From positions 171,625 to 235,624 of the IMG/VR virus record IMGVR_UViG_3300027844_001828: a DNA stretch of 64,000 nucleotides; one strand, written 5' to 3'. Shown piece after piece: positions 25,328 to 63,412 of the stretch. The notes below the pieces were generated by a model. The model worked only from the letters and a program-made list of their open reading frames with translations. It searched no databases and had not been told where the DNA came from. The position numbers and the translations under genes were made by a program. Position 1 is the first letter of the stretch. Every line of letters begins with the position of its first letter.

Positions 25328-25861
25328 ATGAAAAAGACTATTACATTGATTGCATGCATCATCGGCCTCACTTTTATCACAGGCTGTACGGAAGATAAAA
25401 ACAGTGCGGATTCTATTCAGGCGGAACAAACTAAAGAAGCAATGGTAGAAGCGCAAAGGCAAGTGGGAATGCCAGCTATTGTCAATTATCGAGAACGGAA
25501 AATGATGAAAAGCATTTTCGAATTGCGTGATAAGAACGATCTTATTTGCTACGCATATATTTTCAGTGAAATGACTGGGAAGTACACCTTTCTCGGAAAA
25601 TGTATCGGATATGGTCTCCCGTACTCTGTTCAATTCACAAATCCTGAACGTGTTCGAAAAGTTAGAGGCGCAACCGGATCATATTTAGACACCGTCACAG
25701 TCCCACAGCCAGATCCAAATGGGCTATTCATGCCCGAAGGCTTGTCAGCGACATGGCTTGCTTTGATCAATCCAGAAACCGGCGATCCTCAAGTCGTTTA
25801 TGTCGAACCGTTGATTACGGTCTCACCGTTCCCTTTGCCCAGTACCGTTGTCCAACAATGA
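25328..25861 (+). CDS. Putative lipoprotein, conserved phage family
   Basis: Signal peptide with ITGC lipobox; GYGLPYSVQFTNP, QPDPNGLF. Confidence 0.75.
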   Translation: MKKTITLIACIIGLTFITGCTEDKNSADSIQAEQTKEAMVEAQRQVGMPAIVNYRERKMMKSIFELRDKNDLICYAYIFSEMTGKYTFLGKCIGYGLPYSVQFTNPERVRKVRGATGSYLDTVTVPQPDPNGLFMPEGLSATWLALINPETGDPQVVYVEPLITVSPFPLPSTVVQQ

Positions 25862-26412
25862 CTTACCAACCACCCCCCAGGAGAAGAATATGAAAACATT
25901 GAACATGAATTTGCCAGATATCTTTGTTACAGGAATACTTACATGTGACAAGCCGACAACTAGCAAAGAGCCAAGAGTCATCCTTTGGAAAGAGGGCGCG
26001 ACACCAAAGATACAAGAAGATGGCGACTACTTCCAGTCCCCCGACGACTTCGTGTATGTCAGCCAGTGGGACAGAGCACTCTTTGTCAAAATGTACGGAG
26101 AGATTGAATTGGGATCGTCCCAGGAAATCTCTTTGCAAACTTGGTGACCACAATGCACCCCGATGAATTCATCAAATTAGTAGACAATGTTTTCGATGGT
26201 CCTGACGAAGATATATCTTTGAGGACCAGAGAAAGCTTTGACAAGATAACAGATATTAATGAAAAGAGATGGTTTGTTGGTCATGTGTCATTGAGATTGA
26301 CATCTTTCATAAGCGGAATTATAGGATCGGAGAATAATGAAATGAAACTCTTGATAGAGAGAAGTGTTATTGCTGACTTAGCATTCCGTCCGCCAATAAA
26401 GAGGGAAGAGAG

Positions 26413-26859
26413 GTGAACTATTTAAGAGGGCTCTACAATTCTCTTAAAGAGATGAATAGGCGGCAAACAAAGTCCTTTACGGCATGGAAGGTTATAGATT
26501 GTAATCGGCGCTCTGTAGTCGTTTCAAATGTTCCTGGCATGTCCATGAAATATAGTCTTAATAAATGGGTAAAAAAAGAATTTATGAAAGGACCTCTTAT
26601 GGCTTTCTATACGAAAGAGCAAGCAGAGAGATTCGTGAAAAACAACTTAGCCGGGAACAAAGCGAGAGTTCAATTACTTGATAGACTTGAACACTCTCTT
26701 ATTGTAAAGGCCGAAGTCATTGAATTCAATGAGGCTGAAGAGCCAAAGTGGTCAATTAAAATGATTAGTGAATCAGATTGCAGTATGACAGAGTCGTGGA
26801 GAGCTTGTTCATGGCCAAAGGGAACAATATTTTGTGAACAAATAAAATGTGTGGAGTAA
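26413..26859 (+). CDS. Hypothetical protein, paralog of ORF 30063
   Basis: Shared WKVI...P(L/I)MA...WxKGT..CE.IKC. Confidence 0.65.
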   Translation: MNYLRGLYNSLKEMNRRQTKSFTAWKVIDCNRRSVVVSNVPGMSMKYSLNKWVKKEFMKGPLMAFYTKEQAERFVKNNLAGNKARVQLLDRLEHSLIVKAEVIEFNEAEEPKWSIKMISESDCSMTESWRACSWPKGTIFCEQIKCVE

Positions 26860-28280
26860 CATATTATGAATGAAGAAAAAGAGACTGGAAATCCCATTAT
26901 CAGCCTTATCCCAAAAAAATAAGTCATTTATTTGGGGATTCGTTATCTGCTCATTGTTGGTCTATGTAACATCTGGTCCAAAGCAAGAGGCGGAAAACCA
27001 AAGTGGAAGGGACAAAAACGATTGAAAAAAACAGAAGTTATTCATAGGGTTGAAATAGCAACAGTTAAACCAGACGTTTCTGGTTTTTAAGTAATTCCAA
27101 ATGTTATATATGATAAGATAGAATATGATGTTACTCTTTTTGATTCGAACCGAAAAGCACTTGCGACATGGGATCTCAGATATATCATAATCAAATAACT
27201 GGCGACCTTCATCTTATAACCAATTCGAAAAAAAAGGGGCGGTTGTATTGAATATCTGGAAAGGGCCATACGGAATCAGTGTGTCTGAATAGATAAATAG
27301 TCTATAACTAACTGTTAATGAATAATTTACGCGGAGTTATGAATAGATGGAAGAGTTAACTAAAGAATCAAGTCGATTGGAGTTTCTCTTTCCGATCATG
27401 ATAGCTAATAGAATGATTAGAACCAATTCTGCTGGCCCTGAGTGTGAAAGGAAATGGTTTAGAAAGCCTCATGGTTGGGAAACACAAAGAAAGACTCCAA
27501 CGTATTTGTATCAACAATGCGCGTTCTGTTCAGACAGGAAGATGATAAGGTTGGCTGAAGGATTTGATGAGCCAAGAGCAAGGGGGTGGGAAGACATAGG
27601 AGTGGTGAAACAAAATGAAAATTGAAGATGACGGGTCGCTCACACTTCACAGGTGTGATATAGCATGGTGGGTTGACCATTTTGAGAAATCAGACCAGCG
27701 TTTTAATGAAATGGATGTCAAAAAAAGAGCTTAGTGAATTGTCTGAGTTCTCGCCAGACGCATAGATCGCCGCCGCCTCTGCTCAGTCGGCAGGTTATAA
27801 AAAAAGACGGTTGAGTGGATCGAACAAAAAAGGTCAATAGAAAAAACATAATGAAGTAACATTATTAACACAATGAAGCGACATGTTCTTTTTTATAATA
27901 GCCGTGCTTATAACAGTCATCTTTATGATGGATGTGGAAGCGGGAATTATTACAACAGGCGTTTGTTCGCTTTTCACCCTAACAATACTTACAGGATTTA
28001 CAAACTGGATATTAATAGTCCTGATTATTGACACAATCATTACTGGCAGCGTTGATGAAACACTGTTTGGAATGACAATGTTTATAACAGCACTATTTTT
28101 ATTTTCAGAAATATGACAATGAGAGAAGAAGATAGAATTGAACTGAAGAAGGCCTTGAAAGAGGCATCGATTAGTACCAGACCATCAAACCGCTTTGATC
28201 GTGTGGCAACAATAGAATTTAAGAGCGGATCGACGAAATCAGCAGAACTAATATTGAACGCGGCAAGAAGCTTCGTCAGG

Positions 28281-28320
28281 ATGAAAGAAGATTAAAGAAG
28301 ATTAAAGAAGATTAAAGAAG
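28281..28320 (+). repeat. 10-bp tandem repeat x4
   Basis: AT(G/T)AAAGAAG repeated four times. Confidence 0.85.
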
Positions 28321-29095
28321 AATAAGTGACAACGCAAGATCTAATGGATTTGGATGGGGGGAACCGCCGTCCTGAAGAGAGGTAACCATGAAAATAAAGA
28401 TCATTCAAGCTGGACAAGCATTAAGATGTAAGAAATCTCACATTTTCAAGTTGATGGAGGTGGGGTCGAATGATCAGATAAATGTCGAATTCAAGTGGTG
28501 TATCTATTATGAGGATGACACCTTGGTTAAGACCAGAGCCGATAAAGAGGAATATGTTCTCCCGAAACAAATGTCCATAACATCAAGAAACGCTACAAAA
28601 GAAAGCGCTGAACTTGTACTCGAAGAAGAATTCTCAAAGTACATAGCATCAATGGAACAACCAGACGGCGACGACGCACTCGTTTTGTTCTTGGAAGGTA
28701 AAGAGAAAAACATTGTCTATCAAGATGAAGATGTATGGGTGGCAATTAAGGAATTCTTCTTGTTTTTGTGCGAATGGGACGAGCCACCAGAAGTTAAAGA
28801 GCCAGAAACCTATACACAAGAAGAACTTGAAGAACATCAAAAGTCCGTACCCGAACTCTGGGACGCAGATCCCGATTGCTGGCATGAACTCGATCCAAAC
28901 TCATGGTCTGGAATCAAATGTATGAAATGCACAGGGTGGTATCGCCTCTAATGAATAGAAACACAGTAATATTTATTATCCTCTTGTCGTTATTTTTATT
29001 AACGGCAGCATGCGGATTTCCAGCTATGGCTTGACAAACACATAATTATCCGGTATAGTACAAGCATTAACAACGACAAGAACTAAGAGAATAAC

Positions 29096-29749
29096 ATGAA
29101 CTTGACAAGAAAACTATTGGCGTCAACAGAGCCGTGCCTCAAAAGAAACGCGATCTATGACAAAGACCCACAACAATTAGCCTACACAGTCAATGCGTCC
29201 ACAAACCCAATGGTCTTTATGGATGCGCAGAAAAGGATCATCGGCGAAGAGATCATTATCAAAGGTGATCTTGAATATATTGAAAAGAACGAAGATAAAA
29301 TGCTCACCGGAATCTTCGACCTTGCACAAGAACACGAAAAAGTCAAATATGATTTCAGAGACTTTAGATTGAGAACGATGATAAGGGCCATCCAGGACAT
29401 TGAAAAACATGATCTCGTCGTCGCAAATATCATCATGGGAATCGAAGACTGGACCCAATTGAATCACTACTACTCGGCTAAAAAATGGAAGAGGGTCTTC
29501 GGAGCATACGCAAAGGTAAGACCCATGACCGAAGAAACCTGGAAAACAACTGGAATCATAGCAAAGATCCAAGGACCAATAAGACCAGTTGATATCATCG
29601 CCCTTCCAAATATGCCAAAAGGACAAATCTACCTCGCTACCAAGGGAGAGTATATTGGAGAAATTAGTTCGTCGGAATTGAAGGATAATGTAAGATCTTT
29701 AACGATCTGTATAACAAGCATGACTGGAGTTAATGTATTAACAACATGA
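29096..29749 (+). CDS. Hypothetical protein, possibly a degenerate major-capsid-protein paralog
   Basis: Order of motifs RKLL, IYDKD, IEKHDLVVANIIM, TGIIAKI.G, MPKGQIY, EYIG recalls HK97-fold MCPs of large phages (from memory only). Confidence 0.35.
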   Translation: MNLTRKLLASTEPCLKRNAIYDKDPQQLAYTVNASTNPMVFMDAQKRIIGEEIIIKGDLEYIEKNEDKMLTGIFDLAQEHEKVKYDFRDFRLRTMIRAIQDIEKHDLVVANIIMGIEDWTQLNHYYSAKKWKRVFGAYAKVRPMTEETWKTTGIIAKIQGPIRPVDIIALPNMPKGQIYLATKGEYIGEISSSELKDNVRSLTICITSMTGVNVLTT

Positions 29750-30062
29750 AAATAAGCAACTTCAAATTAGAAAATGAAGAGAGAGACGGTGAGCATGTGA
29801 TTTTTACAGGGACAGTTGAAGTAGTCACCGGCTCCTGGTTCTGGAAAAAGAAGACGGTCAAAGGAGTCAAGAAGAAAACTTTTTTGTGGTTCTGGACCGA
29901 CAATGGTGAATTAACTCCGGGAGAACTCGTGGAAAACGCCGCCAGAGTCTTTGCAGAAAAATCAGGCAAGCATCCCAAACTCTTGTGAAAGAAACAATAG
30001 ATAAAACTGTTGACAATAAATCACAAGACTTAAGAATAAATTTGAACAGTAGGAGCAAACCA

Positions 30063-30458
30063 ATGAAACCAACTATCGGATGGAAAGTCATTAGTAAAGA
30101 GAGAAAATCAATCCTTACAGGTGATGTGAAAGGATACGGAAAAGAATATCCAATCGGGAAAATGGTGGGAAGATCCAAACGAAGACTCCCAATTATGGCA
30201 ATGAAAACAAGACAAGATGCCGTGGATTTCATAAAGATGGAAAGAAAAAAACACGACGAACAGGAGAACTACTTCACAAGAGCATTAGATGAAGCAGTGA
30301 TCGTTCAAGTGGAAATGTATGGAATCAAAGACAAAACAGAATACGTTAATGATACTAAAATCTTCTTGGTCTCTACTACGCCAATTGTAAGCCAATCATA
30401 CAAAAGACCATGGGCCAAAGGAACCGTCCTCTGCGAAGCAATCAAATGTATAACTTGA
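30063..30458 (+). CDS. Hypothetical protein, paralog of ORF 26413
   Basis: AGGAG SD; shared motifs with ORF 26413. Confidence 0.65.
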   Translation: MKPTIGWKVISKERKSILTGDVKGYGKEYPIGKMVGRSKRRLPIMAMKTRQDAVDFIKMERKKHDEQENYFTRALDEAVIVQVEMYGIKDKTEYVNDTKIFLVSTTPIVSQSYKRPWAKGTVLCEAIKCIT

Positions 30459-31961
30459 TAGGAGAATAAACAATGAAACCAGAAGGATTACTTCTTAAAG
30501 CCGAAAGAGAATACATAGAAAAGAACAAGTCGCCACTAAGAGAAGACTACCACTATGTCTAAAATAATGAGAGGAAATCTTTTAATAAAACACGGATTCT
30601 CAGTAGCTGTTGATGGTGTTGAAATCACAAGCAATCTATGATAACCTTACCAAAAAATAAAGCCATCGATGCCATTATAGCCGTCTACGTCAAACCAAAG
30701 GAAATAAAATGACATATAACACGCATACAGAGGGACTACCGCCAGGAAATGATAAGGACAACAAAGCTAAGAATAGAAGACCAAACGAAGGTAAGATTAA
30801 ATGCCCAGAACTAAACAAAGAACAACAAATAAGATATAATGCATACCTTGAAGGATGCTTGAAATATGTACATATCTGGGAACCAACAGAAGAACAATCT
30901 CAAAGAGAATTGAAATACGCAGAAGAACAATCTCAAAGAGCATTGGAATACGCAAAAGATAAATCACGAAAAAGCTTTCAATAACAACATGAATGAACAT
31001 AAAGAAGAATAAGCATGGGATAAGCAATGTAACCTCGAATTAACTGGGAGAATAAAGAATGACAGGAATAGAATGGTATTGCATATACTGTGGAGGATCA
31101 ATACTTACAAGCCTCGGAATCATTATGAACAACGGTGATAGATTCATAAGAAAAAAACACCCAAGATATGACGCCGATATATCAATCATAGCATGCCCAT
31201 TACTATTGCCAATGTCAATATACGCATTGATAGGTAAATTTTTATACTTAATTAATATAAAGACCACGTACATGACATATAACGAAAAACAGGAGAACCA
31301 ATATGGAACTCAACTTTAACCCGTTATTTGAACAATTGAAAAGAAAAAGAATTATTACTAATAACAAGCCGAAGCACAACCATAAGAAAATTAAAGAACA
31401 AAAACAAAAACAAGAGCAAAAGAAAAGGATGCTGCCAATTATGACAGCGATAACAGGATGAAACAAATTATTAATAAAATCATTGACTGACTCTGGTGGA
31501 TCATTGTAATAAGAAAAAATGAGTCCCACCCATCCCTTAACATGAACAAAGTAAATAAACATGGAATGCTCATAGAACAAAATAGAATCATGAGACTAAG
31601 AAAAAAAGAACATGACATGGATCTTGATAATGAATGACAATGAGGGAGAACAATATGGAAGATGAAGTATAGAAGAAACTCAATTGATTGAGAAAGAGAT
31701 AAAACTAATAAGCACAGACGCAGAACTCGGAGAAGCATGGTACGCTTCTCTCATAAATTCAAAGAAAACCTCGATCAAGAAAGACAAAATGAAACTAAGA
31801 TCCGAGACAGCGATGGAGCAAGACCAGTTGAAATACACGATGGAGGAAACCTCGGAAGCCAAAGATCAGAGATCATAGTATGGAATGCAGATCATGATTC
31901 AGTCGAATACGTTAGAGATAACATGAAGGAACTCTGGAAAGTAGTGTTGTTAGGAGAGTAA

Positions 31962-33481: not shown

Positions 33482-33515
33482 GGTTCACTGTATAAAACAT
33501 TTTATACAGTGGACC
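33482..33515 (+). repeat. 34-bp 13-8-13 palindrome, copy 1
   Basis: GGTTCACTGTATA-AAACATTT-TATACAGTGGACC; degenerate copies at 33429-33462 and 33548-33581. Confidence 0.95.
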
Positions 33516-33816
33516 GAAACGAGGAAGCGCCTGGTGTACGAAAACGGACGATTTGGTAAAAACACTTTTATACAGTGGACCGGAGGGTTGGCCGTGGAGT
33601 TTTGGTAAGATCTGTAAAATATCCCTTAATAGGTATAAGAGAAAAGAATCTTTCACAGAGTGCTTGTAATGTGAATGTTGGTGGGATATAGTGTTTGCAT
33701 GATAACCAAAACGACAATCAATGGCGACATTGTTCAGATTGAAACAGCAACATAGCAAGGGTGAAGCAGTAGAGTGGCTTGAAAAAGAGAGTGTACTAAC
33801 TTACGGATGGTGAATT

Positions 33817-34059: not shown

Positions 34060-35001
34060 AATATGAAAATCTCTGAAATACCGAATCTGGACGATCATTC
34101 AATTGATCCAAATGATTACGATAAATTGATCGTAGAGTTTCTTGTAGCAGGACAGTGCCTTCTTAGGCTCTCTAACTACGCTCAAATAAAGGCTGAAAGC
34201 ATAAAGGAAAGAAAAGCAGGGAACATTGAAAAAGCTTTTCTTCTATCTCGTAATATGGAAAATACTTATAATGAATTGCCAGATTGGGCGAGGTGGTGAG
34301 ATGAAAGCAGTAACAGGAGAATTGTGGCAAAATAAATCACCTCTGTCAAGAGTGAATGACAATCTGGTAGAACGATGAATGGGATAGGGGTTCAGCCCCC
34401 CAAGAAAAGATCACACGACACATCACAACGGAGGGTTGAGAGATGACTATCGAACACCCAGAATATTTTTACTATGCAGAGCTGGAAGGCGACTTCTTTC
34501 ATTCGTTTGATTATTATACGGATTTGGTTATCAACATCCACTGCACCTCAATTGAAATCCGTAAAACCTCGATGAAAAGGTACACTTGGCCTTGGCGGAT
34601 GCTCAGGGAGACGCATTGGGAGGCGGTGGAAGACGCCGAGAACCTCCTAAAGAATTATGCCGACGTCCTGTTCCGAAGCCAGCAGAAACCCCACCCTGCC
34701 ATCCCAGACGCAGATGCGGTGAACACCCACATCTTGAAAATGAGGGACGGGGTGTCGTTGCCGTCGCCGGAATACATGCGAGAGTGGATTGGTACTCAAA
34801 CCCTCTACCTGTATGCTGGACCTGGCCAAGTGCATGTGGAACCACTACCCCACGAACAAGGAGACGAGGAATGAGTGAATGACAAGACGATGTGCAGGTT
34901 GCGACTCTGAATCTATATAAGGGATTCTCCGAAGGTGGTCGTCATCGAATGGTTAGTTGATCATGCGACTGAGGTTCAATCCCTGTATCAGACTGCCAAT
35001 C

Positions 35002-35043
35002 TTTCTAATAACGACTTGAAAAGTCAACTTGAGGGGTTAGAGT
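35002..35043 (+). promoter_or_regulatory. Promoter-containing 42-bp direct repeat, copy 1
   Basis: TTTCTAATAACGACTTGAAAAGTCAACTTGAGGGGTTAGAGT; TTGAAA-N16-TAGAGT. Confidence 0.85.
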
Positions 35044-35108
35044 GTTATTATGTCAATAACATACAAAGAACTTGCAGCAACGATTTTGTCCTGGAATCAG
35101 GAATAACG

Positions 35109-36689
35109 ATGAAGATTAAAGTTGGTCACGAGTTCTTCCGCAAAGAGCGGTACTCCGCATACGCTGATTGGAAAACCGCATTCTGGCGGGAACTGGAACA
35201 AAATTCAGATGATGCCAAGTCAAGGCGCGTCGATATCAATATAGTTCCTGATGGGAATGGCTGTATTGTTGGATTCGATGACAACGGCTGTGGTATGAGT
35301 GAGGCTGTCATTCGGGATGTGTTTATGAGTCTTGGTGAGACTACGAAGTCGGGTGATTCTACGGGTGGGTTTGGTCGCGCTCGTATGCTGACTCACTTTT
35401 CAATGCCTAAGTATCAGATCAAATCGGGTTGTATTTATGTGAGCGGCAAGGGATCTGAGTATCAAATCAGGAAAAGTGATAGCTACGTTTTGGGGACGAA
35501 GCAGAAGATATGGATTGATGATGCTTCTATGTCAGACATGGAAATGGCTTTGCATGATTATCTTGGAAAGTGTAATCTTGCCCATGACATCTACGTCAAT
35601 GGTGTACGGTGGAACAAGTGGTTGTACAGGCGTAAGCTTATCAGGGATATGACATTTGGTTCAGTCTACGTGAACAAATCCTCAGACCTTAAAAACACAG
35701 TCGTGTTCAGGGTCAACGGGGTGATGATGTTCACTCGATATACATCGGCAAATGCGTTGGTGGTGATCGAAATCTATCCCAGTATTAGTCGTGATGTGCT
35801 TACTTCTAACCGTGATGGAATTCACTACAAGTATCAAAGCGAACTGGATATATTTCTTAACAAGTTGGCTATCGATACGACTTCGACTCTAAAGCGTAGA
35901 CGGACAAACAAGAGTACTCGCAGACAAGGACAAGGTTGTTTCATCTCCTGTGTAAAGCGGAAGGAATTGTCGGTGATGAAGCGGGATTCTGATCCATCCG
36001 ATTCCTACTCTGGTAACGGTGGCTACACTATGGATACTTCAAGTGATGAAGCCACGATAAAGTCCTTCACAGGTGTGGTTTTTGGTGGCACAAGTCAGGC
36101 AGATTCTGAGCCGATTGCAGCCTTGTACGGTGGTGATGGCTATTATGGATCTGAGTCTGAGTGTATCGCCAAACTCGTAGAATCTGATCCTACTGAGATC
36201 GATATGTATGATGTGGCGATACTTGATGAGTGTCAGGATATAGGACCGGTTAGTAAGGTGATCGAATCATACGATCCTACGAATTGGAGAGACAAGGCTG
36301 GCGGCACGAAAAAGAAGCTCCTGTCTCTGTGGCAGATTGCGGTCAAGCATTCTCTGGATATTCTTCAAGAGGAAAAACCCTCTGATGGTATTCCTTGGAT
36401 CGTTGGGTGGGTATTCGATGATAGTGAAGAGGCAGGGATGAAGGCTGCACACAAGATGTATGACGATACGCATGGGTTCCTTATCAATCCAGTAGGCTTG
36501 GATGGCAAGTTGCAATTCAAGTTGAATCCTGAGGGCAAGTCTTCATTGTTCGCAATCGCCCTACATGAGGTTACTCATGTTTATTGCGAGATGCACAATC
36601 AGGAGTTCTCGTCCCTTCATACTGCACTGACAATCAATGGGATGTCTCGGATCAAGGAAGTTCTCAGAGACATGAAGGAGAATTCATAA
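35109..36689 (+). CDS. GHKL (Hsp90/MORC-like) ATPase with C-terminal HExxH motif
   Basis: RELEQNSDDA, DDNGCGM, GGFGRA, GT; ALHEVTH...HNQEF. Start placed downstream of the promoter. Confidence 0.8.
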   Translation: MKIKVGHEFFRKERYSAYADWKTAFWRELEQNSDDAKSRRVDINIVPDGNGCIVGFDDNGCGMSEAVIRDVFMSLGETTKSGDSTGGFGRARMLTHFSMPKYQIKSGCIYVSGKGSEYQIRKSDSYVLGTKQKIWIDDASMSDMEMALHDYLGKCNLAHDIYVNGVRWNKWLYRRKLIRDMTFGSVYVNKSSDLKNTVVFRVNGVMMFTRYTSANALVVIEIYPSISRDVLTSNRDGIHYKYQSELDIFLNKLAIDTTSTLKRRRTNKSTRRQGQGCFISCVKRKELSVMKRDSDPSDSYSGNGGYTMDTSSDEATIKSFTGVVFGGTSQADSEPIAALYGGDGYYGSESECIAKLVESDPTEIDMYDVAILDECQDIGPVSKVIESYDPTNWRDKAGGTKKKLLSLWQIAVKHSLDILQEEKPSDGIPWIVGWVFDDSEEAGMKAAHKMYDDTHGFLINPVGLDGKLQFKLNPEGKSSLFAIALHEVTHVYCEMHNQEFSSLHTALTINGMSRIKEVLRDMKENS

Positions 36690-37764: not shown

Positions 37765-38553
37765 ATGCCACGGACTAATAAACCCGTCCCGAAGTTTTTA
37801 CTCACCTTGAAATCGTCAAACATCAAAACCGGGCCGATGGCTGTAAGCACTTCTCCAATGGGTACTTGCCCGGACGCCTGCCCTTTCAAGGGTAATGGTT
37901 GCTACGCTGCCTACGGCCCTGTAAAAATCTGGTGGGACGCCTGTACAGCCAATGGTGACGATCCGGTTGAGGCATACACTGAGTTCCTTAGCCGCGTTAC
38001 TGAAAACATTGACAACGATGCATTTTGGAGACATAATCAAGCTGGCGATTTATTTTCATTGAATGGTCGAACGATCAATCAAAAGGCGGCCCGTGCTTTG
38101 ATTGCTGCGAACGAGGGTAAGAAAGGTTATACTTACACTCACTACGGCGTGATCAAACAGCCTTTCACACAGAAGCGTGAGGCAGAGCGGAATCGTAAGA
38201 TTGTTGAAGAAATGAATGCGAGCGGGTTCGCTACGAATGTATCGGCTAACAGCATGGAGCATGCCGATAAGATCAAGGCGAGCGGTATCAAGGCTCCAAT
38301 CGTTACGTTGTTGCCGGAGCGGTACAAACATGACAAGAAAGCTTTCTTGACACCTGGGGGCAATAAGATCGTTGCTTGTCCCGCGATTACACATGACGAC
38401 ATTACTTGTGTGAAGTGTAAGCTTTGCATGCATCCTGAACGTGATATTATCGTGGGGTTTCCATCACATGGTAGTGGTAAACGCCGGGCTGAATCAGTGT
38501 ACACTGAATGGAGTCCGGACGAGATTAAAACAACAGCCAAGGGAAAAATCTAA
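37765..38553 (+). CDS. Cys-rich conserved phage protein (gp88/radical-SAM-like; putative Fe-S or Zn binding)
   Basis: SNIKTG, TCPDACPF...CYA, RHNQAGD, YTYTH, CPA, CVKCKLC, FPSHG. Confidence 0.6.
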   Translation: MPRTNKPVPKFLLTLKSSNIKTGPMAVSTSPMGTCPDACPFKGNGCYAAYGPVKIWWDACTANGDDPVEAYTEFLSRVTENIDNDAFWRHNQAGDLFSLNGRTINQKAARALIAANEGKKGYTYTHYGVIKQPFTQKREAERNRKIVEEMNASGFATNVSANSMEHADKIKASGIKAPIVTLLPERYKHDKKAFLTPGGNKIVACPAITHDDITCVKCKLCMHPERDIIVGFPSHGSGKRRAESVYTEWSPDEIKTTAKGKI

Positions 38554-42450: not shown

Positions 42451-42484
42451 GGTTCACTGTATAAAAACTTTTATACAGTGGACC
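42451..42484 (+). repeat. 34-bp palindrome, copy 2
   Basis: GGTTCACTGTATA-AAAACTTT-TATACAGTGGACC. Confidence 0.95.
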
Positions 42485-43683
42485 GTAGTGATAGGCACCC
42501 GGAAGTCTTTTTCCTAAAAACTCCTCAAGTGAGCTTGTAACCAACGAATGATGGGTTATTGTGTGAGTATGTCAAAAACAATCCAGATCAAAAAGGGCTG
42601 CGAGTGTGGTAGCCAGAGGTTCAATGCAGATCGATTGATCCGCGTTGAAATCATTGTTGACGAGAACAATATGTTCGTTGAAAATATAGCTGGCGGCGAT
42701 GCTGTCTCTATTGTTGACGACAAACCCCCAGAGGGACCGTACACTTGTGTTGAGTGTGAGTGCGAGTACGACACCCTTGATGGAGAATGATGCCTACCAA
42801 ACGTAAGTTTTACCGTACTGTTCTTGCTATCGAAGTTCTTAGCGAGACGCCCATTTCGGCCTGTACTTCATATCAGGACATTCTTCGTGAAGCTGAAGAG
42901 GGTGATTTCTCTCATGCTTCACTTCCTCAAGAGGTATACAATCAGGAAATAGACGGGCGAAAATGCGCTGAGCTTTTGGTTAGGCAGGGTAGCGATTCTG
43001 GTTTTTTCCAGTTGACAGATATTGGGGAGGATGTCGAGGATTATGATGGATAAATTGTATGTTCCTTATGTGACGGAAAGGTGGGTAGTGATACCGCACA
43101 CCTCAATCAAGATAAATGGATCGGAGAGTGTTGCTGGGATGAAAGACTCCGGGGGACAGAATAATGGCTGAGTTAATAGTAATTTCTGTGGTTATTTTCA
43201 TTTCTTGTGTGGTGTGTACGTTCGTTGCCACACAAAAGCAGGCGAAACCTTTGATGATCTTGCAAGGGGTTATCAGAAAGAGATCGAAGAGCTTTACAAG
43301 CAGATCGCCAACATGATCGAATTTGTCCCATTCACAGCCTGGAGAATTGTGTATGAGAATAAGATGTTCATTGTAAAAAGCGAACAGATTAATATACGCA
43401 GGATTGTAAATGGAGAAATCCGATATATGGTTAGCACTGGCATGTTCTGCACTGGGATGTTTTCGACTCTTTATGACAGTCGAGACGACATTCCTAAAGG
43501 TAGGGGGAATTCCCGCACATGGTATCACCATGCTCTTTTCAAAGATGAAATTGAAGCGTTGCTTGCCATTCAAGGGTTGGCGCAAGAAATTTTGAAGACT
43601 CGCAACGATTCACATCAAGAAGACGTTTTACCGCTTCACAAATCAATCGACTCAAACGCCAAACGCTTAAAGGAACTCGGAAT

Positions 43684-43860
43684 ATGAAATACATTCGCAG
43701 AAATCCGCTGGAAAAAGACTTTGGTTGGGGAAAATTAAAATTAAGAAGTTGGGATAAAATTAAAAATGAGCTTGACAAATGCGATCTTCTTTGTGGAAAT
43801 TGCCATGATGAAGCGCATCAAGAAATTAGAACTGGAACTATTTTTACCCCAATAGCTTAA
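43684..43860 (+). pseudogene. HNH endonuclease C-terminal remnant running into tRNA-Arg
   Basis: NPLEKDF...WDKIKNELDKCDLLCGNCHDEAH. Confidence 0.7.
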
Positions 43861-43920
43861 GGGATAAAGCAGTGGATTTCTAATCCACATATTCAGGTTC
43901 GAATCCTGGTTGGGGTACCA
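43846..43920 (+). tRNA. tRNA-Arg(UCU)
   Basis: Acceptor ACCCCAA/TTGGGGT, anticodon arm GTGGA-TTTCTAA-TCCAC, T-loop GGTTCGAATCC, encoded CCA. Confidence 0.92.
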
Positions 43921-46452: not shown

Positions 46453-46586
46453 GGGACCGTAGCACAATGGTATGTCATAATTGTCATGGAGAGATACATG
46501 ATGAGCTAATTCCTAAAAAACAAATTTTAGAACTTCAAATTAGTAAATGGAATCGTGGCCAAACGGTTAAGGCTGCATGCTCATAA
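46453..46586 (+). pseudogene. tRNA 5' fragment fused to HNH C-terminal remnant
   Basis: GGGACCGTAGCACAATGGT joined to (M)VCHNCHGEIH. Confidence 0.6.
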
Positions 46587-46624
46587 CATGTTGATTGTAG
46601 GTTCGAACCCTACCGGTTCCACCA
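46549..46624 (+). tRNA. tRNA with CAU anticodon (elongator Met or Ile2)
   Basis: Acceptor GGAATCG/CGGTTCC, anticodon arm GCATG-CTCATAA-CATGT, GGTTCGAACCC, encoded CCA. Confidence 0.9.
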
Positions 46625-48130: not shown

Positions 48131-48580
48131 TTGAGATGTAACGCAGGAATTAGTCCAGAGCACATGGCAGATCAGCATTTGTGTGAAGCAAGTGAACTTA
48201 AAATGGTGCCTGGCACCATAAAAAAGAGATTAAAATTTAACATAACAAAACCCATCCCAGATAAGTTTTGTTTGAATGGAGGACATATCTCGTTCTTCTA
48301 TGATAAATTGCACTATTTGCGCCTTCGCCATGGTCATGTATTTAAGGAATGCATAGCCAGAGGTAGAAAATGCCAGAGCTTATTTTATGATCTATCAGAT
48401 TTTCCTGACAATCTGATAAATGATTGGCATCCTACTTTAGATGATAGTAGGATAGTAAGAACCCGCATGGTGAAGAGATTATTTCAGAAACCCAAATTTT
48501 ATCGCTATAAAGGAGAACCTATAGATGATATGGAAGACTTTTGCTCTAGGATCATGCTGAGTCCTTTATATACGAAGTAA
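48131..48580 (+). CDS. denV: Pyrimidine-dimer DNA glycosylase (T4 endonuclease V-like)
   Basis: ADQHL..E, IPDKFCL.GGH..FFYDKL.YL, EC..RG, KPKFYRY; may lack one residue near the catalytic Glu. Confidence 0.78.
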   Translation: MRCNAGISPEHMADQHLCEASELKMVPGTIKKRLKFNITKPIPDKFCLNGGHISFFYDKLHYLRLRHGHVFKECIARGRKCQSLFYDLSDFPDNLINDWHPTLDDSRIVRTRMVKRLFQKPKFYRYKGEPIDDMEDFCSRIMLSPLYTK

Positions 48581-50087: not shown

Positions 50088-50229
50088 GGCTTAGCAAGGC
50101 AGTACTGGTGTAGCCGGTTAGGGTTTTGAGCCCGGTGGCAGTCGCACCCTTAAGATACAAAAGTATTGATAAGGCACCAGTTGGGAATAAGCTGCACAGT
50201 CGAAGCGGACGTAGAGATTGCCAAGTCTC
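50088..50229 (+). ncRNA. Candidate structured RNA upstream of HNH gene
   Basis: GGCTTA/TAAGCT and ACTGGTGT/GCACCAGT stems enclosing two hairpins. Confidence 0.35.
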
Positions 50230-50255
50230 GCCCCACCGTTTCATTTTGGATAACT

Positions 50256-50672
50256 ATGAAAGAAACCATCATAAAGAAAAAGCAAGACCTCGAAAGAACG
50301 GGTGGTCACATCAAACCTGAAGATGTATTCCCATTCATTGAGCCAAGCACGAAACCGAACAGGAGTCCAAAGCATGATTTCCTGGGACACTCAGTAAATG
50401 TTTCGTCTCCCCGCTACAATGTCTTCGCAAACAAGGGATGTGACTGTGTTACTTGCGGAGTTAAGGGTAAGTATTTCCTCCTTGAAAGGCACAAGGCCTC
50501 CGGCCCCAAGCAGCCCTATCATTTGAATCTCTACGCTATCGATTTCGAAGGGGATGAGGTACTTATGACTGTTGACCACATCATCCCAGCTTCGCATGGT
50601 GGACCCAGATCCTTCGACAACCTTCAGCCCATGTGCAAAGTTTGTAATGAAGAAAAGGGTAACACAGTTTGA
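50256..50672 (+). CDS. HNH endonuclease
   Basis: CVTCG...MTVDHIIPASHGG...NLQPMCKVCNEEKGN. Confidence 0.88.
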   Translation: MKETIIKKKQDLERTGGHIKPEDVFPFIEPSTKPNRSPKHDFLGHSVNVSSPRYNVFANKGCDCVTCGVKGKYFLLERHKASGPKQPYHLNLYAIDFEGDEVLMTVDHIIPASHGGPRSFDNLQPMCKVCNEEKGNTV

Positions 50673-52557: not shown

Positions 52558-52591
52558 AGAGCCTCGACGAAATATTATCGTCGGGGCTTTT
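52558..52591 (+). terminator. Intrinsic terminator preceding palindrome pair
   Basis: AGAGCCTCGACGA-loop-TCGTCGGGGCTTTT. Confidence 0.7.
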
Positions 52592-52643
52592 GCGTGTACG
52601 GCCCATTGAGGTGATCGCCGAGGGACTCCCTTCCACCTCGCTT

Positions 52644-52677
52644 GGTTCACTTTATAAAATGTTTTATACAGTGGACC
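52644..52677 (+). repeat. 34-bp palindrome, copy 3 (inverted spacer)
   Basis: GGTTCACTTTATA-AAATGTTT-TATACAGTGGACC. Confidence 0.95.
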
Positions 52678-52746
52678 GAAACGGTTTGCCGTCGCTGGCG
52701 GTCGGGGCCCCCGATATCGCCAGCTCTTCAGGCTCATGTTGCTCCT

Positions 52747-52780
52747 GGCTCACTGTATAAAACATTTTATACAGTGGACC
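52747..52780 (+). repeat. 34-bp palindrome, copy 4
   Basis: GGCTCACTGTATA-AAACATTT-TATACAGTGGACC. Confidence 0.95.
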
Positions 52781-52855
52781 GAAACGGATAGGAGCCGGGC
52801 TCCCTGGTGAGACAAAATGACACACATTATTTTCGAAAATAGTCTTTTATCAAGC

Positions 52856-52883
52856 TTGACATAAACGTTTGGTGAGTTAGAGT
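52856..52883 (+). promoter_or_regulatory. Sigma70-like promoter, 16-bp spacer
   Basis: TTGACA-N16-TAGAGT. Confidence 0.75.
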
Positions 52884-52927
52884 CATTGCATGCATCGAAA
52901 AATCATCATCCAACTCGGAGTTTAATC

Positions 52928-53557
52928 ATGGACCTTGTACCCGGAACACTTGCAGTTCATCGTGGCAGTATTGTTTTCGTCACCAGAGTCGAAAACGCGA
53001 AAAAGTATCCCATCATCTTCAAGAAAGCGTTACAGGCGAAGGGGACATATCACGACAGAGCCACCGGCTTTTCTTCTGTGATCGGCTCATTTGACTTGAA
53101 GCAGTTCAACGAACTCTCCGGGTCTCCGGCGCGAACCATTGAAGCTGACGATGACGTTGATCTCGATGCGGTGGAAGTTTACATTAAGGGGTTGAACATC
53201 GATGATGATCTCCTCTTGAAGAGTGGTAAGACAGCGAAGTATCGCGGATGGGTATCGCGTCGTCCAGTGATGCCAATCTCAGCCACTATCAATGGTAGGC
53301 CGTTTAAGCTCCGGCCCGACAGCATTGTCCTCCCGAAAGATAAACGTTCTGAGGATGTAATCATGGAAGAAGTCCTTGATGTCTACTGCGGTCTCTCGCC
53401 GGAAAATCTTACCAGTGACGGTGAAGTGAGAGCCTCGGCGGTTGTTAACCAGCGTTATCGTGAGTTGAAAAAGCAGCTTCGCGGCTTGTGCAGTGAACTT
53501 GGCCGTGATGTCAGCGAGACAGAAGCGTACTCTTATCCCGGAAACATGAACAAGTAA
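52928..53557 (+). CDS. Hypothetical protein with LSPENLxxDGE domain
   Basis: GGAG SD; C-terminal motif common in large phages. Confidence 0.65.
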   Translation: MDLVPGTLAVHRGSIVFVTRVENAKKYPIIFKKALQAKGTYHDRATGFSSVIGSFDLKQFNELSGSPARTIEADDDVDLDAVEVYIKGLNIDDDLLLKSGKTAKYRGWVSRRPVMPISATINGRPFKLRPDSIVLPKDKRSEDVIMEEVLDVYCGLSPENLTSDGEVRASAVVNQRYRELKKQLRGLCSELGRDVSETEAYSYPGNMNK

Positions 53558-54362: not shown

Positions 54363-55427
54363 ATGAGCGCAGGAATCATACCCGGAGTCGATGCAGGATG
54401 TATTGGCTACAAGGAACATTTCGGGGGTACCTGGCATGGGTTCCCGGAGTACGAAGTTATCGATGGCCCAGTCTCAATGGAACAGACCCGTAAAATTCTT
54501 GAGCATGAAGTTGTCATGAATCCGGTAACGTTGACTGGTGACTTCGAAGGCGAGGAAACCGAGATGTTCGCTCTTGTTCGCAAGGACACTGGCCGCGTCC
54601 TTTACAAAGAGAGCGTGTCGGATGAGTATTACATCACCCAGAACAAGGCGTTTCTCGACCAGCTTCAGTTGCGTATCTTGACCCCAAACCCGCAAGTTTC
54701 AATCGAATCCACCGGTACGCTCTTCGCCTTCCGCGTCGGTTTCGTGAACTTGCTTCTCAATCGGTTCCGTGTCAATGGTGATGACAGTGAGACAATCGCT
54801 CGTCTCATGTACTACAATGCGTTCGGTGGTCGCAGCATTACAGCTGGCGCACACACCACTCGTATCGAATGTGCCAACACGATGAACATGGCCGAAGCGC
54901 AAGCTTACGCTAACGCAACGATCAAGAAGTTCAAGCATACAAAGAATGCTGAGAAACGTCTTGCTGACCACCTCGTTGACTTGGGCGAGATGTATTCGCT
55001 CATGGAAACGCACAAGGACGCACTCAACTGGCTTTCTTCGCAGACTATCAACTCAACGGAAGTTCAGCGGTTCGTTGGTAACCTCTTCGCCCTCCCAGCC
55101 AAGGCTTCGAAGACGATGATCAGTCGGCGAACCAGAGAGCGGGGCGAACTCTTGCAACACTTCGAGGACTGTGACAATCTTCAGGGTGCGATTGCGAGGA
55201 CTCGATTTTCCATGCTTCAGGCTGTTATCTGGTACGCGAACAACAACAATATCCGTGGGGATAGTGACATGGCGTATTCGTACTTCAATACGGTTTCCGG
55301 CGGGACACGTGATGCCTTGAATCAGCAGGCGTTCAGGCTCTTGACTTGTCAAGACATCCCGCTCCCAGTCGTTGACATCACTGAACCGGAAACGGCGGGT
55401 GAGACGGAACTTGCTCCCGCAGAGTAA
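54363..55427 (+). CDS. DUF932 (TIGR03299-like) protein
   Basis: WHG, VSDEY..TQN, ESTGTL, RIECANT, KHT. Confidence 0.75.
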   Translation: MSAGIIPGVDAGCIGYKEHFGGTWHGFPEYEVIDGPVSMEQTRKILEHEVVMNPVTLTGDFEGEETEMFALVRKDTGRVLYKESVSDEYYITQNKAFLDQLQLRILTPNPQVSIESTGTLFAFRVGFVNLLLNRFRVNGDDSETIARLMYYNAFGGRSITAGAHTTRIECANTMNMAEAQAYANATIKKFKHTKNAEKRLADHLVDLGEMYSLMETHKDALNWLSSQTINSTEVQRFVGNLFALPAKASKTMISRRTRERGELLQHFEDCDNLQGAIARTRFSMLQAVIWYANNNNIRGDSDMAYSYFNTVSGGTRDALNQQAFRLLTCQDIPLPVVDITEPETAGETELAPAE

Positions 55428-56238: not shown

Positions 56239-56297
56239 CTGTTTTCCCGGCTCGCCGATCTTTACCCCCTTGGCGAGACCTCCTGGTGACCTCGGCT

Positions 56298-56331
56298 GGC
56301 TCACTGTATAAAACATTTTATACAGTGGACC
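56298..56331 (+). repeat. 34-bp palindrome, copy 5
   Basis: GGCTCACTGTATA-AAACATTT-TATACAGTGGACC. Confidence 0.95.
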
Positions 56332-56424
56332 AAAACGGGTGGTCTCGATCAGACCAGGGCTGACCTCTCATATTTCTTTTCAAGAACAGCTTGCAATGTT
56401 GAAGATGCGATCTATATTGTTGAT

Positions 56425-59489: not shown

Positions 59490-60578
59490 ATGCAAATTGG
59501 CGTTCCAAAAGAAATTAAAAACAACGAGTTCAGGGTTGGGCTAACTCCTGCTTCAGTAGCTGAATTAATTGCTAACAATCATTCCGTCTTTGTTGAACAT
59601 AATGCTGGCAAAGAAATTGGCTTCTCTGATAACGATTACTCTTTAGCAGGAGCAAATATTCTTGAAACTGCTGCCGAAGTCTTCAATGCTGCCGAGCTTA
59701 TTATTAAGGTTAAGGAGCCCATGCAAGAAGAATTGCAATTTCTATCCGCTCGCCACACTCTTTTTACTTACTTGCACTTAGCTGGTGATAAGAAGCATGC
59801 TGCTAATCTAATTAAAACTGGTGTTACAGGCATTGCTTATGAAACTGTTACTTCAGCTAATGGCTCTTTGCCATTGCTTGCGCCAATGAGTGCTATTGCT
59901 GGTCAACTCAGCATAGTGGTTGGCTCCTATCATCTGTTAAAACCAAATAAAGGCAGGGGAACTTTAATTGGATCTTTTGGAGAAATTGATCCAAGAGTTG
60001 TTACTGTTATTGGAGCAGGCGTGGCTGGTACTGAGGCCATTGAAAAAGCAATTAGAAACAATGCTCACGTTAAAATTATTGATTTATCTAAAGAGAGATT
60101 GGCTGAGTTAGAAGTAATTCATGGAACTGACCGCATTGAATACATTGAATCCACCGACGCTGCGATTGTCGAGGCTTTATCACAATCTGACTTGGTTGTT
60201 GGCGCTGTTTATGTTGTTGGCAAACAAGCTCCAAAAATCGTAACAGAGAAAATGCTTGCCAAGATGACCCCAGGAAGTGTGATGGTTGATATTTCAATTG
60301 ATCAAGGCGGATGCTTTGAGACAAGCCGACCAACGAATCATGATGAGCCTACTTTTATTAAAGATGGAGTCGTGCATTATTGTGTTACTAACATGCCCGC
60401 CGCAGTTCCCTTGACGGCGACCCACGCATTGAATAAAGCAACCTTACCTTTTGTGATAGACCTAGCAAACAAAGGTATAGATCAAGCATTAAAAGATGAC
60501 GAACATCTTTTAAATGGATTGAATATAAAAAATGGTGAAGTTGTTCATCCTGCTGTAAAAGAAGCCTTGCTAGGCTAA
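59490..60578 (+). CDS. ald: Alanine dehydrogenase
   Basis: IGVPKEIKNNEFRVGLTP, KVKEP, FTYLHLA, LPLLAPMS, GAGVAG, IDQGGCFETS, HYCVTNMP. Confidence 0.96.
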   Translation: MQIGVPKEIKNNEFRVGLTPASVAELIANNHSVFVEHNAGKEIGFSDNDYSLAGANILETAAEVFNAAELIIKVKEPMQEELQFLSARHTLFTYLHLAGDKKHAANLIKTGVTGIAYETVTSANGSLPLLAPMSAIAGQLSIVVGSYHLLKPNKGRGTLIGSFGEIDPRVVTVIGAGVAGTEAIEKAIRNNAHVKIIDLSKERLAELEVIHGTDRIEYIESTDAAIVEALSQSDLVVGAVYVVGKQAPKIVTEKMLAKMTPGSVMVDISIDQGGCFETSRPTNHDEPTFIKDGVVHYCVTNMPAAVPLTATHALNKATLPFVIDLANKGIDQALKDDEHLLNGLNIKNGEVVHPAVKEALLG

Positions 60579-62472: not shown

Positions 62473-62506
62473 GGCTCACTGTATAAAACATTTTATACAG
62501 TGGACC
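62473..62506 (+). repeat. 34-bp palindrome, copy 6
   Basis: GGCTCACTGTATA-AAACATTT-TATACAGTGGACC. Confidence 0.95.
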
Positions 62507-63412
62507 GGGATTTGTTGACGGCGGACACGGCGGACAAAAATATTCCTAAAAAGTGTTTGTACTCAAGGAATGTTGATGTAGATTATTAGCAACCTAAACC
62601 AAAGGATTGATCATGAAGCACTATTTTTTAGTTGGAGTGAGAGAAGTTCACGTATCACATCGGATGGTGTGTGTTGAAGATGAGGACGGGAATCCTTCTG
62701 GTCAATCCCTTGAGGAATGCGCGATTAGCAAGGCGCTCGAAGAGTCTGAAAACGAAGTTTTCTTGGAGTACTCGTACACGATGGAGGAAACAAGGACTCC
62801 AGAGCGAGCTTCTGAGGATGATATTGCAAACTTCTACCCACAAGACGACTCGGAAGAAGAACAGGGGGGGGGATGAACCAGCCCACCAGAGTCGTAGAAT
62901 GTGAAGAACCGGTAGTTCGCAAGTTCGTTGCTGGCGAACTCACTGAGGAAGAAGCATTTGCGGAACACCGAAGGCTCCAATTTAAGCACTTGCGAACAGC
63001 TTATGAGAAGGTGTTCGGGAAGGACTCCAGAGCATTGATCGTCACTGCTATCGAAGATCAGATGACAGCTTTGGGAAAAGTGTCTACCTCAGAAAAGGAG
63101 TGGGCCAGGATTCGTATCGCCGAGTACAAAGAAATATTGATAAACTTGGGCGAGATCGATTGACTTTTTATTTATAGGTGTCATATTGTTTTATTATGGC
63201 AAAAAGTACACATAAGGAGAACACCTATGTTTGAAAACAAAGAGTTTGATGCCGAGCCATTCGACGCCTTTGTGTCCCGTATGAGTGAGGTGGAGAAGAG
63301 CGCGGAGTTTGTACCGACGGTTACGCCCGAGGCAAAGACAGGGAACATCGGCTACTTCGAGATAGAATGCTTTGATGGAGTCTGGTGGGGCTAATTATTT
63401 TCACAAATGAGC

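What the first reader, a model, noticed from the sequence alone, without database searches (positions are those of the whole stretch)
52644..52780. Tandem site pair in which one 8-bp spacer is flipped while the arms keep their polarity
Seen: copy 3 has spacer AAATGTTT, the exact reverse complement of AAACATTT in copies 1, 4, 5 and 6, yet its arms keep the usual orientation. Copy 4 starts 103 bp downstream. Inference: a footprint of strand exchange or hairpin-mediated flipping at the palindrome centre, suggesting the site is cut or extruded as a cruciform rather than only bound. Two point changes (CA to TG) would give the same sequence.
Basis: partly seen in the sequence, partly recalled or inferred. 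Interest (0 to 1): 0.6.

Follow-up and report, generated by a model that had tools for sequence, protein, structure and literature searches.

The report
Phage palindromic site pair, centre flipped
The two sites are copies of a 34-bp palindrome at the head of small early-gene operons in an uncultured marine giant phage; one copy's flipped centre is a fixed variant, and I found no evidence for an active DNA switch.

Summary
Copies at 52644-52677 and 52747-52780 lie 103 bp apart, and their centres are TG and CA. Only those two bases differ, because the rest of the "8-bp spacer" is itself palindromic. Copy 2 has AC, which is not an inversion.

The full element is 34 bp: GGnnCACTGTATAAAA-NN-TTTTATACAGTGnnCC. 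It occurs 6 times in a 235.6-kb uncultured marine jumbo phage, all in the last 30 kb. It recurs in about 40 distinct contexts in related metagenome contigs. It sits between a terminator and a sigma70-type promoter with an UP-like element, ahead of small ORFan operons in a hypervariable region. Homology breakpoints between relatives cluster at it.

In 40 of 40 sites the centre is one A/T plus one G/C. It is never AA, TT, CC, GG, AT, TA, CG or GC. Under that rule CA to TG needs a flip or a double change, so a single templated event is plausible (template switch or short gene conversion from a copy paired in the opposite sense).

None of the seven recombinase, transposase or DNA-binding families I searched for was found. 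No polymorphism at copy 3 was seen. Cutting or cruciform extrusion is not supported. The function is most likely binding of an unidentified dimeric protein, and the element resembles the PeSL modules of T4-type phages.

The parts
33482..33515 (.). Copy 1 of the 34-bp palindromic site, centre CA
33566..33581 (.). Isolated right half-site (TTTTATACAGTGGACC) 50 bp after copy 1; the left half is degenerate
33664..33692 (+). Sigma70-type promoter after copy 1 (TTGTAA-17-TATAGT)
42451..42484 (.). Copy 2, centre AC (a variant that is not an inversion)
42535..42562 (+). Sigma70-type promoter after copy 2 (TTGTAA-16-TATTGT)
52560..52592 (+). Intrinsic terminator-like hairpin plus T run, ending 52 nt before copy 3
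52644..52677 (.). Copy 3, centre TG, with G-to-T in the left arm (CTGT to CTTT); upstream member of the tandem pair
52678..52746 (.). 69-bp spacer of the pair. It contains a G+C-rich inverted repeat (52694-52700 / 52718-52724) and is homologous to the spacer of a second pair found in a relative contig
52747..52780 (.). Copy 4, centre CA; downstream member of the pair
52856..52883 (+). Sigma70-type promoter served by the pair (TTGACA-16-TAGAGT), 76 nt after copy 4
52886..53557 (+). First ORF of the downstream operon (223 aa from the TTG start; an ATG lies at 52919); no family match
56298..56331 (.). Copy 5, centre CA; a terminator lies upstream
56373..56418 (+). UP-like element TTTCTTTTCAA plus promoter TTGCAA-16-TATATT after copy 5
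62473..62506 (.). Copy 6, centre CA. In relatives this position is expanded to arrays of 4 to 6 or more sites
62557..62584 (+). Promoter after copy 6 (TTGTAC-16-TAGATT); ORF start at 62607

Best explanation
The pair consists of two members of a family of 34-bp dyad-symmetric sites, GGnnCACTGTATAAAA-NN-TTTTATACAGTGnnCC.

Shown:
- In this uncultured marine jumbo phage and its relatives, each site lies in an inter-operon module: terminator, about 60 nt, palindrome, 45-110 nt, UP-like element plus sigma70-type promoter, then small ORFan genes.
- All sites lie in a hypervariable end of the genome.
- The sites are the places where homology between relatives tends to start and stop.
- Centres and flanks are reassorted between copies.
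- The two central base pairs are constrained in composition only (one A/T and one G/C). They are nearly free in identity, order and strand.

Inferred:
- The site is bound as duplex DNA by a dimeric protein that has not been identified.
- Copy 3's TG is a fixed evolutionary variant made in one step. Because the arms are palindromic, another copy can pair with it in the opposite sense, most simply copy 4, 103 bp away. A replication template switch or a short-patch gene conversion then copies the centre as its reverse complement and leaves arms and flanks unchanged.
- It is not an active inversion switch. It needs no site-specific cutting.
For: Family and constraint:
- 6 sites against 0.01 expected, and the only 6 in 235.6 kb.
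- 48 metagenome loci hold the core, giving 40 unique sites. 30 of the 34 positions are essentially invariant, while the flanks are unalignable.
- The centre is one A/T plus one G/C in 40/40. The figure is 7/21 in unrelated chance matches (Fisher 5e-9) and 44/80 at the free outer positions.
- Centre length never varies.
- The outer nn positions do not covary, 27/80 symmetric. The conserved GG/CC beyond them therefore argues for sequence recognition and against a mere hairpin.

Module:
- ORF starts lie 105-155 nt after most sites.
- The UP-like motif is downstream in 19/32 sites and upstream in 1/32.
- A terminator lies upstream in 9/32.

Recombination:
- 29/99 homology breakpoints lie within 40 bp of a site, against 7.6% at random.
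- Homology to a relative starts exactly at copy 5.
- Identical 40-nt flanks occur with centre CA in one contig and GT in another.
- Copy number at the copy-6 position varies from 1 to 6 or more.

Flip:
- The homologous pair B keeps CA/CA.
- Pair C in L046 has GT/AC.
- With TG, copies 3 and 4 form a 30-nt, 93% complementary inverted repeat, and the whole pair folds at -41 kcal/mol as single-stranded DNA.
- Template-switch mutation that perfects quasipalindromes is established (PMC7202029).
- TG is identical in three assemblies.
Against: - No binding protein was identified. Resolvase, Phage_integrase, ParB_N, Y1_Tnp, HTH_3, rve, IS110 and HU-type families are absent from the 93%-complete record, and most neighbouring ORFs have no family.
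- An RNA-level role for the hairpin is not excluded.
- The one-A/T-plus-one-G/C rule has no mechanistic explanation.
- Copy 3 has an arm mutation and is the redundant member of a pair. Relaxed selection and two point changes could therefore give TG.
- Only 3 isolated tandem pairs exist, so 2 of 3 with complementary centres is weak evidence (about p = 0.04 on observed frequencies, my arithmetic).
- Site spacings (50-128 bp) show no helical phasing.
- Breakpoint enrichment rests on partly redundant contigs.
- Raw reads were not available, so low-level heterogeneity could not be tested.
Confidence: 0.45

Rival explanations
1. Two independent point substitutions (C to T and A to G) in a redundant, slowly decaying upstream copy. 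The exact reverse complement is a coincidence.
For: - Copy 3 also has an arm substitution and has no promoter of its own.
- Copy 2 (AC) and pairs such as CA/GT and CT/AC show that centres change in ways that are not inversions.
Against: - Both intermediates (TA, CG) belong to the 8 dinucleotides never seen in 40 sites.
- The end state again obeys the rule.
- The other 31 positions of copy 3 and its 7-nt right flank are intact.
- A related TG variant is maintained in two other loci.
Confidence: 0.28
2. The 34-bp site is the crossover site of a site-specific recombinase (13-8-13 lox/FRT-like, or 16-2-16 hix-like). The central dinucleotide sets polarity and compatibility, and TG records an enzyme-made inversion.
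For: - The length and geometry equal loxP/FRT (my knowledge).
- The centre is never self-complementary.
- The sites bound gene cassettes, mark homology breakpoints, and vary in copy number.
Against: - No Resolvase, Phage_integrase, rve, IS110 or Y1 domain is present in the genome.
- Centre orientation is only 24:9 with respect to transcription, whereas a polarity determinant should be uniform.
- The absence of AA, TT, CC and GG is not required by known recombinases.
- There is no heterogeneity in assemblies.
Confidence: 0.08
3. The palindrome acts as an RNA hairpin in read-through transcripts, as a processing site, stabiliser or terminator. The loop bases are free.
For: - It folds at -13 to -15 kcal/mol as RNA, z about -5 to -7.
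- It lies between operons, in the sense orientation of all genes.
- Three arm variants give a U-G wobble on the coding strand.
Against: - The arms are invariant in sequence, with no compensatory changes, in 40 sites whose flanks have diverged completely.
- The outer nn positions do not covary.
- There is no U tract.
- 9 of 32 sites have a canonical terminator about 60 nt upstream, so little transcription should reach them.
- Loop freedom does not explain the composition rule.
- There is no Rfam match.
Confidence: 0.12
4. The element is a selfish miniature mobile element, REP/MITE-like, that spreads in intergenic DNA.
For: - It is an intergenic, palindromic, multi-copy element with tandem pairs and arrays.
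- An HNH endonuclease gene lies 2 kb upstream.
Against: - No Y1/RAYT or other transposase is present.
- No target-site duplications were noticed.
- It holds a strict position within terminator-promoter modules and is confined to one genome region.
Confidence: 0.05

Closest known systems
PeSL (promoter-early stem-loop) cassettes of T4-type phages (PMC2839356, PMC4122927)
   Same: A composite stem-loop plus sigma70-type early promoter is repeated between small ORFan genes in hyperplastic regions. It is associated with indels and module exchange between close relatives. Tandem copies occur.
   Different: - PeSL stem-loops are short G/C-run terminator-type hairpins of variable sequence. Here a separate canonical terminator often precedes an invariant 34-bp A/T-centred palindrome that has no U tract.
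- The palindrome lies 45-110 nt from the promoter, not joined to it.
- The centre-composition rule has no PeSL counterpart.
- The phage is not T4-like: its polymerase is DnaE-like, 35% identical or less to any deposited phage.
loxP / FRT (tyrosine recombinase) and hix / gix (serine invertase) crossover sites (my knowledge)
   Same: The site is 34 bp with inverted arms around a short asymmetric centre. Asymmetry of the centre is the only polarity mark.
   Different: No recombinase gene was found. There are dozens of sites per genome at promoters. Centre orientation is not uniform. The centre varies between sites.
Quasipalindrome template-switch mutation (PMC7202029) and hairpin-associated small inversions in plastid DNA (PMC12371153)
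   Same: Several adjacent bases change at once, so that an imperfect inverted repeat becomes more perfect or a hairpin loop is inverted. No site-specific enzyme is needed.
   Different: Those are generic mutational processes. Here the event would be seen on a functional, selected site family, and it was not observed directly.
Dispersed palindromic operators of global plasmid or phage repressors, e.g. KorB OB sites of RK2 (my knowledge)
   Same: An identical palindrome is repeated at variable distances upstream of many promoters of one replicon.
   Different: The KorB site is 13 bp and KorB is a ParB-family protein. No ParB_N domain is present here. No regulator was identified.
Gammaproteobacterial LexA (SOS) box (my knowledge)
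   Same: The half-site CTGTAT is the same.
   Different: The spacing here is CTGT-N14-ACAG, not CTGT-N8-ACAG. No bacterial genome among 185,579 species carries the flanked site.

Membership tests
PeSL-type promoter/stem-loop cassette | Stem-loop adjacent to a sigma70-type early promoter, repeated between small genes | tested here: met
   Palindrome followed by a TTGYAA-N16-TAnAnT promoter at 5 of 6 window copies. UP-like motif downstream in 19/32 sites. ORF starts 105-155 nt after sites.
PeSL-type promoter/stem-loop cassette | Stem-loop is a terminator-type G/C hairpin of loosely conserved sequence, joined to the promoter | tested here: not met
   The arms are A/T-rich and invariant, with no U tract. 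A separate canonical terminator lies upstream in 9/32 sites. The distance to the promoter varies from 45 to 110 nt.
PeSL-type promoter/stem-loop cassette | Located at indel and exchange boundaries between close relatives | tested here: met
   29/99 homology breakpoints lie within 40 bp of a site against 7.6% at random. Homology starts at copy 5.
Tyrosine-recombinase site (lox/FRT/dif type) | A cognate tyrosine recombinase is encoded | tested here: not met
   PF00589 is absent from the 93%-complete genome, and the control genomes were positive.
Tyrosine-recombinase site (lox/FRT/dif type) | Inverted arms of about 13 bp around an asymmetric spacer of 6-8 bp | tested here: inconclusive
   The site can be read as 13-8-13, but 6 of the 8 spacer bases continue the palindrome.
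Serine invertase/resolvase crossover site | A serine recombinase is encoded | tested here: not met
   PF00239 is absent.
Serine invertase/resolvase crossover site | Non-palindromic central dinucleotide that is the same in partner sites and gives them polarity | tested here: inconclusive
   The centre is never palindromic (40/40). However, it differs between sites, and its strand is 24:9 relative to transcription.
REP/RAYT or IS200/IS605-type hairpin elements | A Y1 (HUH) transposase is encoded | tested here: not met
   PF01797 is absent.
Structured RNA element (terminator or processing hairpin) | Pairing is kept through compensatory changes, or the element matches a known family | tested here: not met
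   No Rfam match. No compensatory arm changes in 8 variant sites. Outer positions are symmetric in only 27/80.
LexA SOS box | CTGT-N8-ACAG spacing (my knowledge) and presence in a host regulon | tested here: not met
   The spacing is N14. The 14 bacterial hits all lack the GGnnCA flank.
Active invertible switch | Both orientations coexist in one population | tested here: inconclusive
   Three assemblies are identical. Only Logan contigs were available; they break at the repeats and cannot show minor variants.

The most novel reading that the evidence does not exclude
The 34-bp sites are the crossover or processing sites of an unrecognised, enzyme-driven cassette-shuffling system in marine jumbo phages, a phage counterpart of integron attC or lox arrays. 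In this reading the never-symmetric, one-A/T-plus-one-G/C centre serves as a polarity or compatibility code, and flipped centres record real strand-exchange events. The enzyme would be one of the many family-less proteins, or lie in the missing 7% of the genome.
Probability: 0.1. Interest if true: 0.85.

Novelty: new variant of a known kind. Interest (0 to 1): 0.45.

Why it matters
Inter-operon repeats that both regulate and shuffle early genes are known from T4-type phages. This is an unrelated, uncultured marine jumbo-phage lineage that uses a much longer, invariant palindrome with a strict and unexplained rule for its two central base pairs. If a protein reads that centre by shape or composition, the site is a clean natural experiment in indirect readout. 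If the sites drive cassette exchange, they explain how the ORFan-rich end of these genomes turns over. For the scan itself, a 'flipped spacer' inside a palindrome reduces to its non-palindromic core, and it should be judged against the whole site family before a mechanism is inferred.

Tried and rejected
- Near and distant DNA searches of deposited phages found nothing. The site is absent from cultured phages.
- The IMG/VR scans gave only one near-identical contig, and it ends before copies 2-6.
- The bacterial genome scan gave 14 single, unflanked chance matches with mixed centres. A host regulon site is rejected; these matches served as controls.
- Read-level test of heterogeneity: all 20 runs are kept as Logan contigs. 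I laid 2,701 letters on 4 runs. The contigs break at the repeats and no variant or joint was seen, so this is uninformative rather than negative.
- Seven Pfam families for recombinases, transposases or DNA-binding proteins were absent from the genome, as was HTH_3.
- Pfam and PHROGs scans of about 50 neighbouring and large proteins gave no regulator.
- An N4-type hairpin promoter read by a virion RNA polymerase was considered. The giant ORFs have no family match, and a conserved sigma70/UP promoter follows each site, so it was not pursued.
- The palindrome is not required for the promoter type: 35 such promoters lie on the + strand genome-wide, and only those in the last 30 kb have it.
- Helical phasing of paired sites is rejected (spacings 50, 55, 71, 90, 93, 103, 128).
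- RuvC, Fis, CRP and LacI-family consensus comparisons from memory did not fit.
- A bulk Pfam scan through a large typed list of references was not attempted, to stay within the limits on typed text.

Full report
**1. What is in the sequence**

The window is the last 64 kb of a 235,624-bp virus record, judged 93% complete and linear. Nearly all genes lie on the + strand: 233 of 273 long ORFs.

The genome encodes:
- a DnaE-like polymerase, 35% identical or less to any deposited phage;
- an SbcCD-like nuclease, a RecB/Dda-like helicase-nuclease, a Lon-like protease, NrdA, and an NAD-dependent ligase.

The runs that hold it are marine or seawater metagenomes. It is an uncultured marine jumbo phage with no close cultured relative.

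At 52644-52677 and 52747-52780 there are two copies of a palindrome, 103 bp apart. The pattern CTGTATAAAA-NN-TTTTATACAG, with up to 3 mismatches allowed, occurs 6 times in the window against 0.01 expected. These are the only 6 copies in the genome, all between 205 and 234 kb.

With flanks, the conserved unit is 34 bp: GGnnCACTGTATAAAA-NN-TTTTATACAGTGnnCC. The centres in window order are CA, AC, TG, CA, CA, CA. Copy 3 also has CTGT changed to CTTT in its left arm.

- Of the '8-bp spacer', six bases continue the palindrome, so only the two central bases differ.
- The arms have no polarity of their own. Direct orientation is shown by positions 3-4 and by the shared right flank.
- Copy 2 (AC) was left out.

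**2. The family**

One scan of the metagenome collection with the centre left free returned 48 loci. Eight are unrelated matches without the GGnnCA / TGnnCC flanks. The rest come from the same phage in other samples and from relatives.

After removing exact duplicates there are 40 unique sites:
- The arms are invariant apart from one or two changes in 8 sites, with no compensatory change in the opposite arm.
- The centre is always 2 bases long.
- Flanks outside the 34 bp are unalignable, except within one array and between one orthologous pair.
- The outer nn positions vary freely and are symmetric in only 27 of 80 comparisons. They are therefore not held as base pairs, yet the GG/CC beyond them is conserved. 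This pattern fits recognition of duplex sequence by a two-fold symmetric protein better than a bare hairpin.

*The centre rule.* All 40 centres consist of one A/T and one G/C. The counts are CA/TG 16, AC/GT 17, AG/CT 7 and GA 1. None is AA, TT, CC, GG, AT, TA, CG or GC.

Controls:
- Unrelated matches to the same arms in bacteria and metagenomes obey the rule in 7 of 21 (Fisher 5e-9).
- The free outer positions obey it in 44 of 80 (2e-8).

I have no mechanistic explanation for this rule, and it is recorded as unexplained. With loci oriented by purine skew, the C of the centre lies on the coding strand in 24 of 33 sites (p = 0.0135). That is a bias, not a rule.

**3. Context**

- Most sites lie 105-155 nt before the first ORF of a run of small genes.
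- A motif ATTTCTTTTCAA, followed by TTGYAA-N16-TAnAnT, lies 45-110 nt downstream. It is downstream of 19/32 sites and upstream of 1/32.
- Five of the six window copies have such a promoter. Copy 3 shares that of copy 4.
- A canonical terminator ends about 55-66 nt upstream in 9/32 sites, including copies 3, 5 and 6.
- The same promoter type occurs 35 times on the + strand and 3 times on the - strand over the whole genome. Only those in the last 30 kb carry the palindrome, so it is an accessory of one region and is not part of the promoter.
- Genes between sites are almost all without family.

The record stops 1.5 kb after copy 6. A relative that is 99.7% identical there runs on for 12.6 kb with four more sites.

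**4. Recombination at the sites**

- Between related contigs, 29 of 99 internal homology ends lie within 40 bp of a site centre, against 7.6% at random. The contigs are partly redundant.
- Homology between one relative and the window begins exactly at the first base of copy 5 and ends 66 bp after it.
- The copy-6 position holds one site here and 4 to 6 or more sites, 50-128 bp apart, in relatives.
- At one array position, two contigs have 40 identical bases on each side but centres CA and GT.

Centres and flanks are therefore reassorted between copies.

**5. The flip**

Pair A (the window) is homologous, from terminator to promoter, to a second pair B that lies beyond the end of the record in the same lineage. 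Pair B has spacing 93 bp and centres CA/CA. One centre changed after the two pairs diverged.

Within each pair the 7-nt right flanks are identical to each other, but they differ between the pairs. This suggests exchange between neighbouring copies.

A third pair, in a more distant relative, has GT/AC, which is again reverse-complementary. Two of three is suggestive only.

Under the centre rule:
- a single substitution cannot lead from CA to TG without passing through TA or CG;
- the sets {CA,CT,GA,GT} and {AC,AG,TC,TG} are linked only by a flip or a double change;
- both sets are common.

With TG, copies 3 and 4 form a near-perfect inverted repeat. The 146-nt pair folds at -41 kcal/mol as single-stranded DNA.

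A replication template switch that perfects a quasipalindrome is an established process (PMC7202029), as are hairpin-associated small inversions (PMC12371153). Either would produce exactly this two-base change and leave arms and flanks untouched. I rate a one-step templated flip at roughly two to one over two point changes.

**6. What is not supported**

- The genome holds no known recombinase or transposase domain.
- It holds no ParB, HU or HTH_3 domain.
- TG plus the arm change is identical in three assemblies. Laid contigs showed no variant, though contigs cannot show minor forms and they break at the repeats.
- A single site is a weak hairpin as DNA.
- Many centre differences are not inversions.

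The inference that the site is cut or extruded is therefore not supported, though it is not excluded.

**7. Verdict**

This is a real, strongly non-random site family. The 'flipped spacer' is a two-base centre variant, best read as a fixed templated flip.

In architecture and likely evolutionary role the element works like the PeSL cassettes of T4-type phages (PMC2839356, PMC4122927). It fails PeSL's stem-loop definition, and it adds an invariant 34-bp palindrome with a novel centre rule. The most likely function is binding of an unidentified dimeric factor at the head of early operons. That step is inferred and has not been shown.

Noticed in passing
all 34-bp sites: window 33482, 42451, 52644, 52747, 56298, 62473 and loci L019-L066: The two central bases are always one A/T plus one G/C (40 of 40 unique sites) and never a symmetric or homo-dinucleotide. 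No mechanism was found.
   Followed up: yes
L039:3770-4170 (also L030, L057, L061): In relatives the copy-6 position is expanded into arrays of 4 to 6 or more sites, 50-128 bp apart. The arrays are interleaved with GGATTTA-like short repeats and repeated GATCACCAGGCCGTCGA segments. The window's own contig ends 1.5 kb after copy 6.
   Followed up: partly
L060:1-12665 (reverse strand continues the window's end): A relative 99.7% identical to the last 1.4 kb of the record continues for 12.6 kb with four more sites and about 35 small ORFs. The record is therefore truncated inside the site-bearing region.
   Followed up: partly
window 33530-33536, 52803-52809, 56282-56288: CCTGGTG lies within 25 nt of copies 1, 4 and 5. 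These are 3 of only 16 occurrences of this heptamer or its complement in the genome. It may be a second motif of the module.
   Followed up: partly
window 52644 and L020:837, L021:6621: The TG-centred sites carry a change at the same arm position (CTGT to CTTT or CTCT). The CTCT variant occurs in both senses relative to the coding strand at two unrelated loci.
   Followed up: partly
whole genome (G000), e.g. window 52856, 56391, 62557: The promoter type TTG[CTA][AC]A-N16/17-TA[GT]AnT occurs 35 times on the + strand and 3 times on the - strand. It often follows an UP-like ATTTCTTTTCAA. This points to host sigma70-type transcription of much of this jumbo phage.
   Followed up: partly
window 50166-50672: HNH endonuclease ORF (168 aa, Pfam HNH 1.4e-11), 2 kb upstream of the pair.
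   Followed up: no
window 59490-60578: Alanine dehydrogenase (AlaDh_PNT N and C domains, E 5e-75), a likely auxiliary metabolic gene inside the hypervariable region.
   Followed up: no
window 48131-48580; 54363-55427; 37765-38553; 34935-36689: A pyrimidine-dimer glycosylase-like ORF, a DUF932 protein, a DUF7227 protein, and a 584-aa GHKL-type ATPase ORF.
   Followed up: no
window 43846-43920 and 46549-46624: tRNA-Arg(TCT) and tRNA-Met(CAT) genes.
   Followed up: no
window 6197-6245: Tandem 21-bp repeat (ACTGCTTGAGCAACTACTTGA-like) inside a minus-strand ORF. Single copies of the same word lie at genome positions 15391 and 104578.
   Followed up: no
G000 15897-31184, 87838-97112: Four giant ORFs (2334, 2759, 1596 and 1494 aa) with no Pfam or PHROG match.
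   Followed up: no
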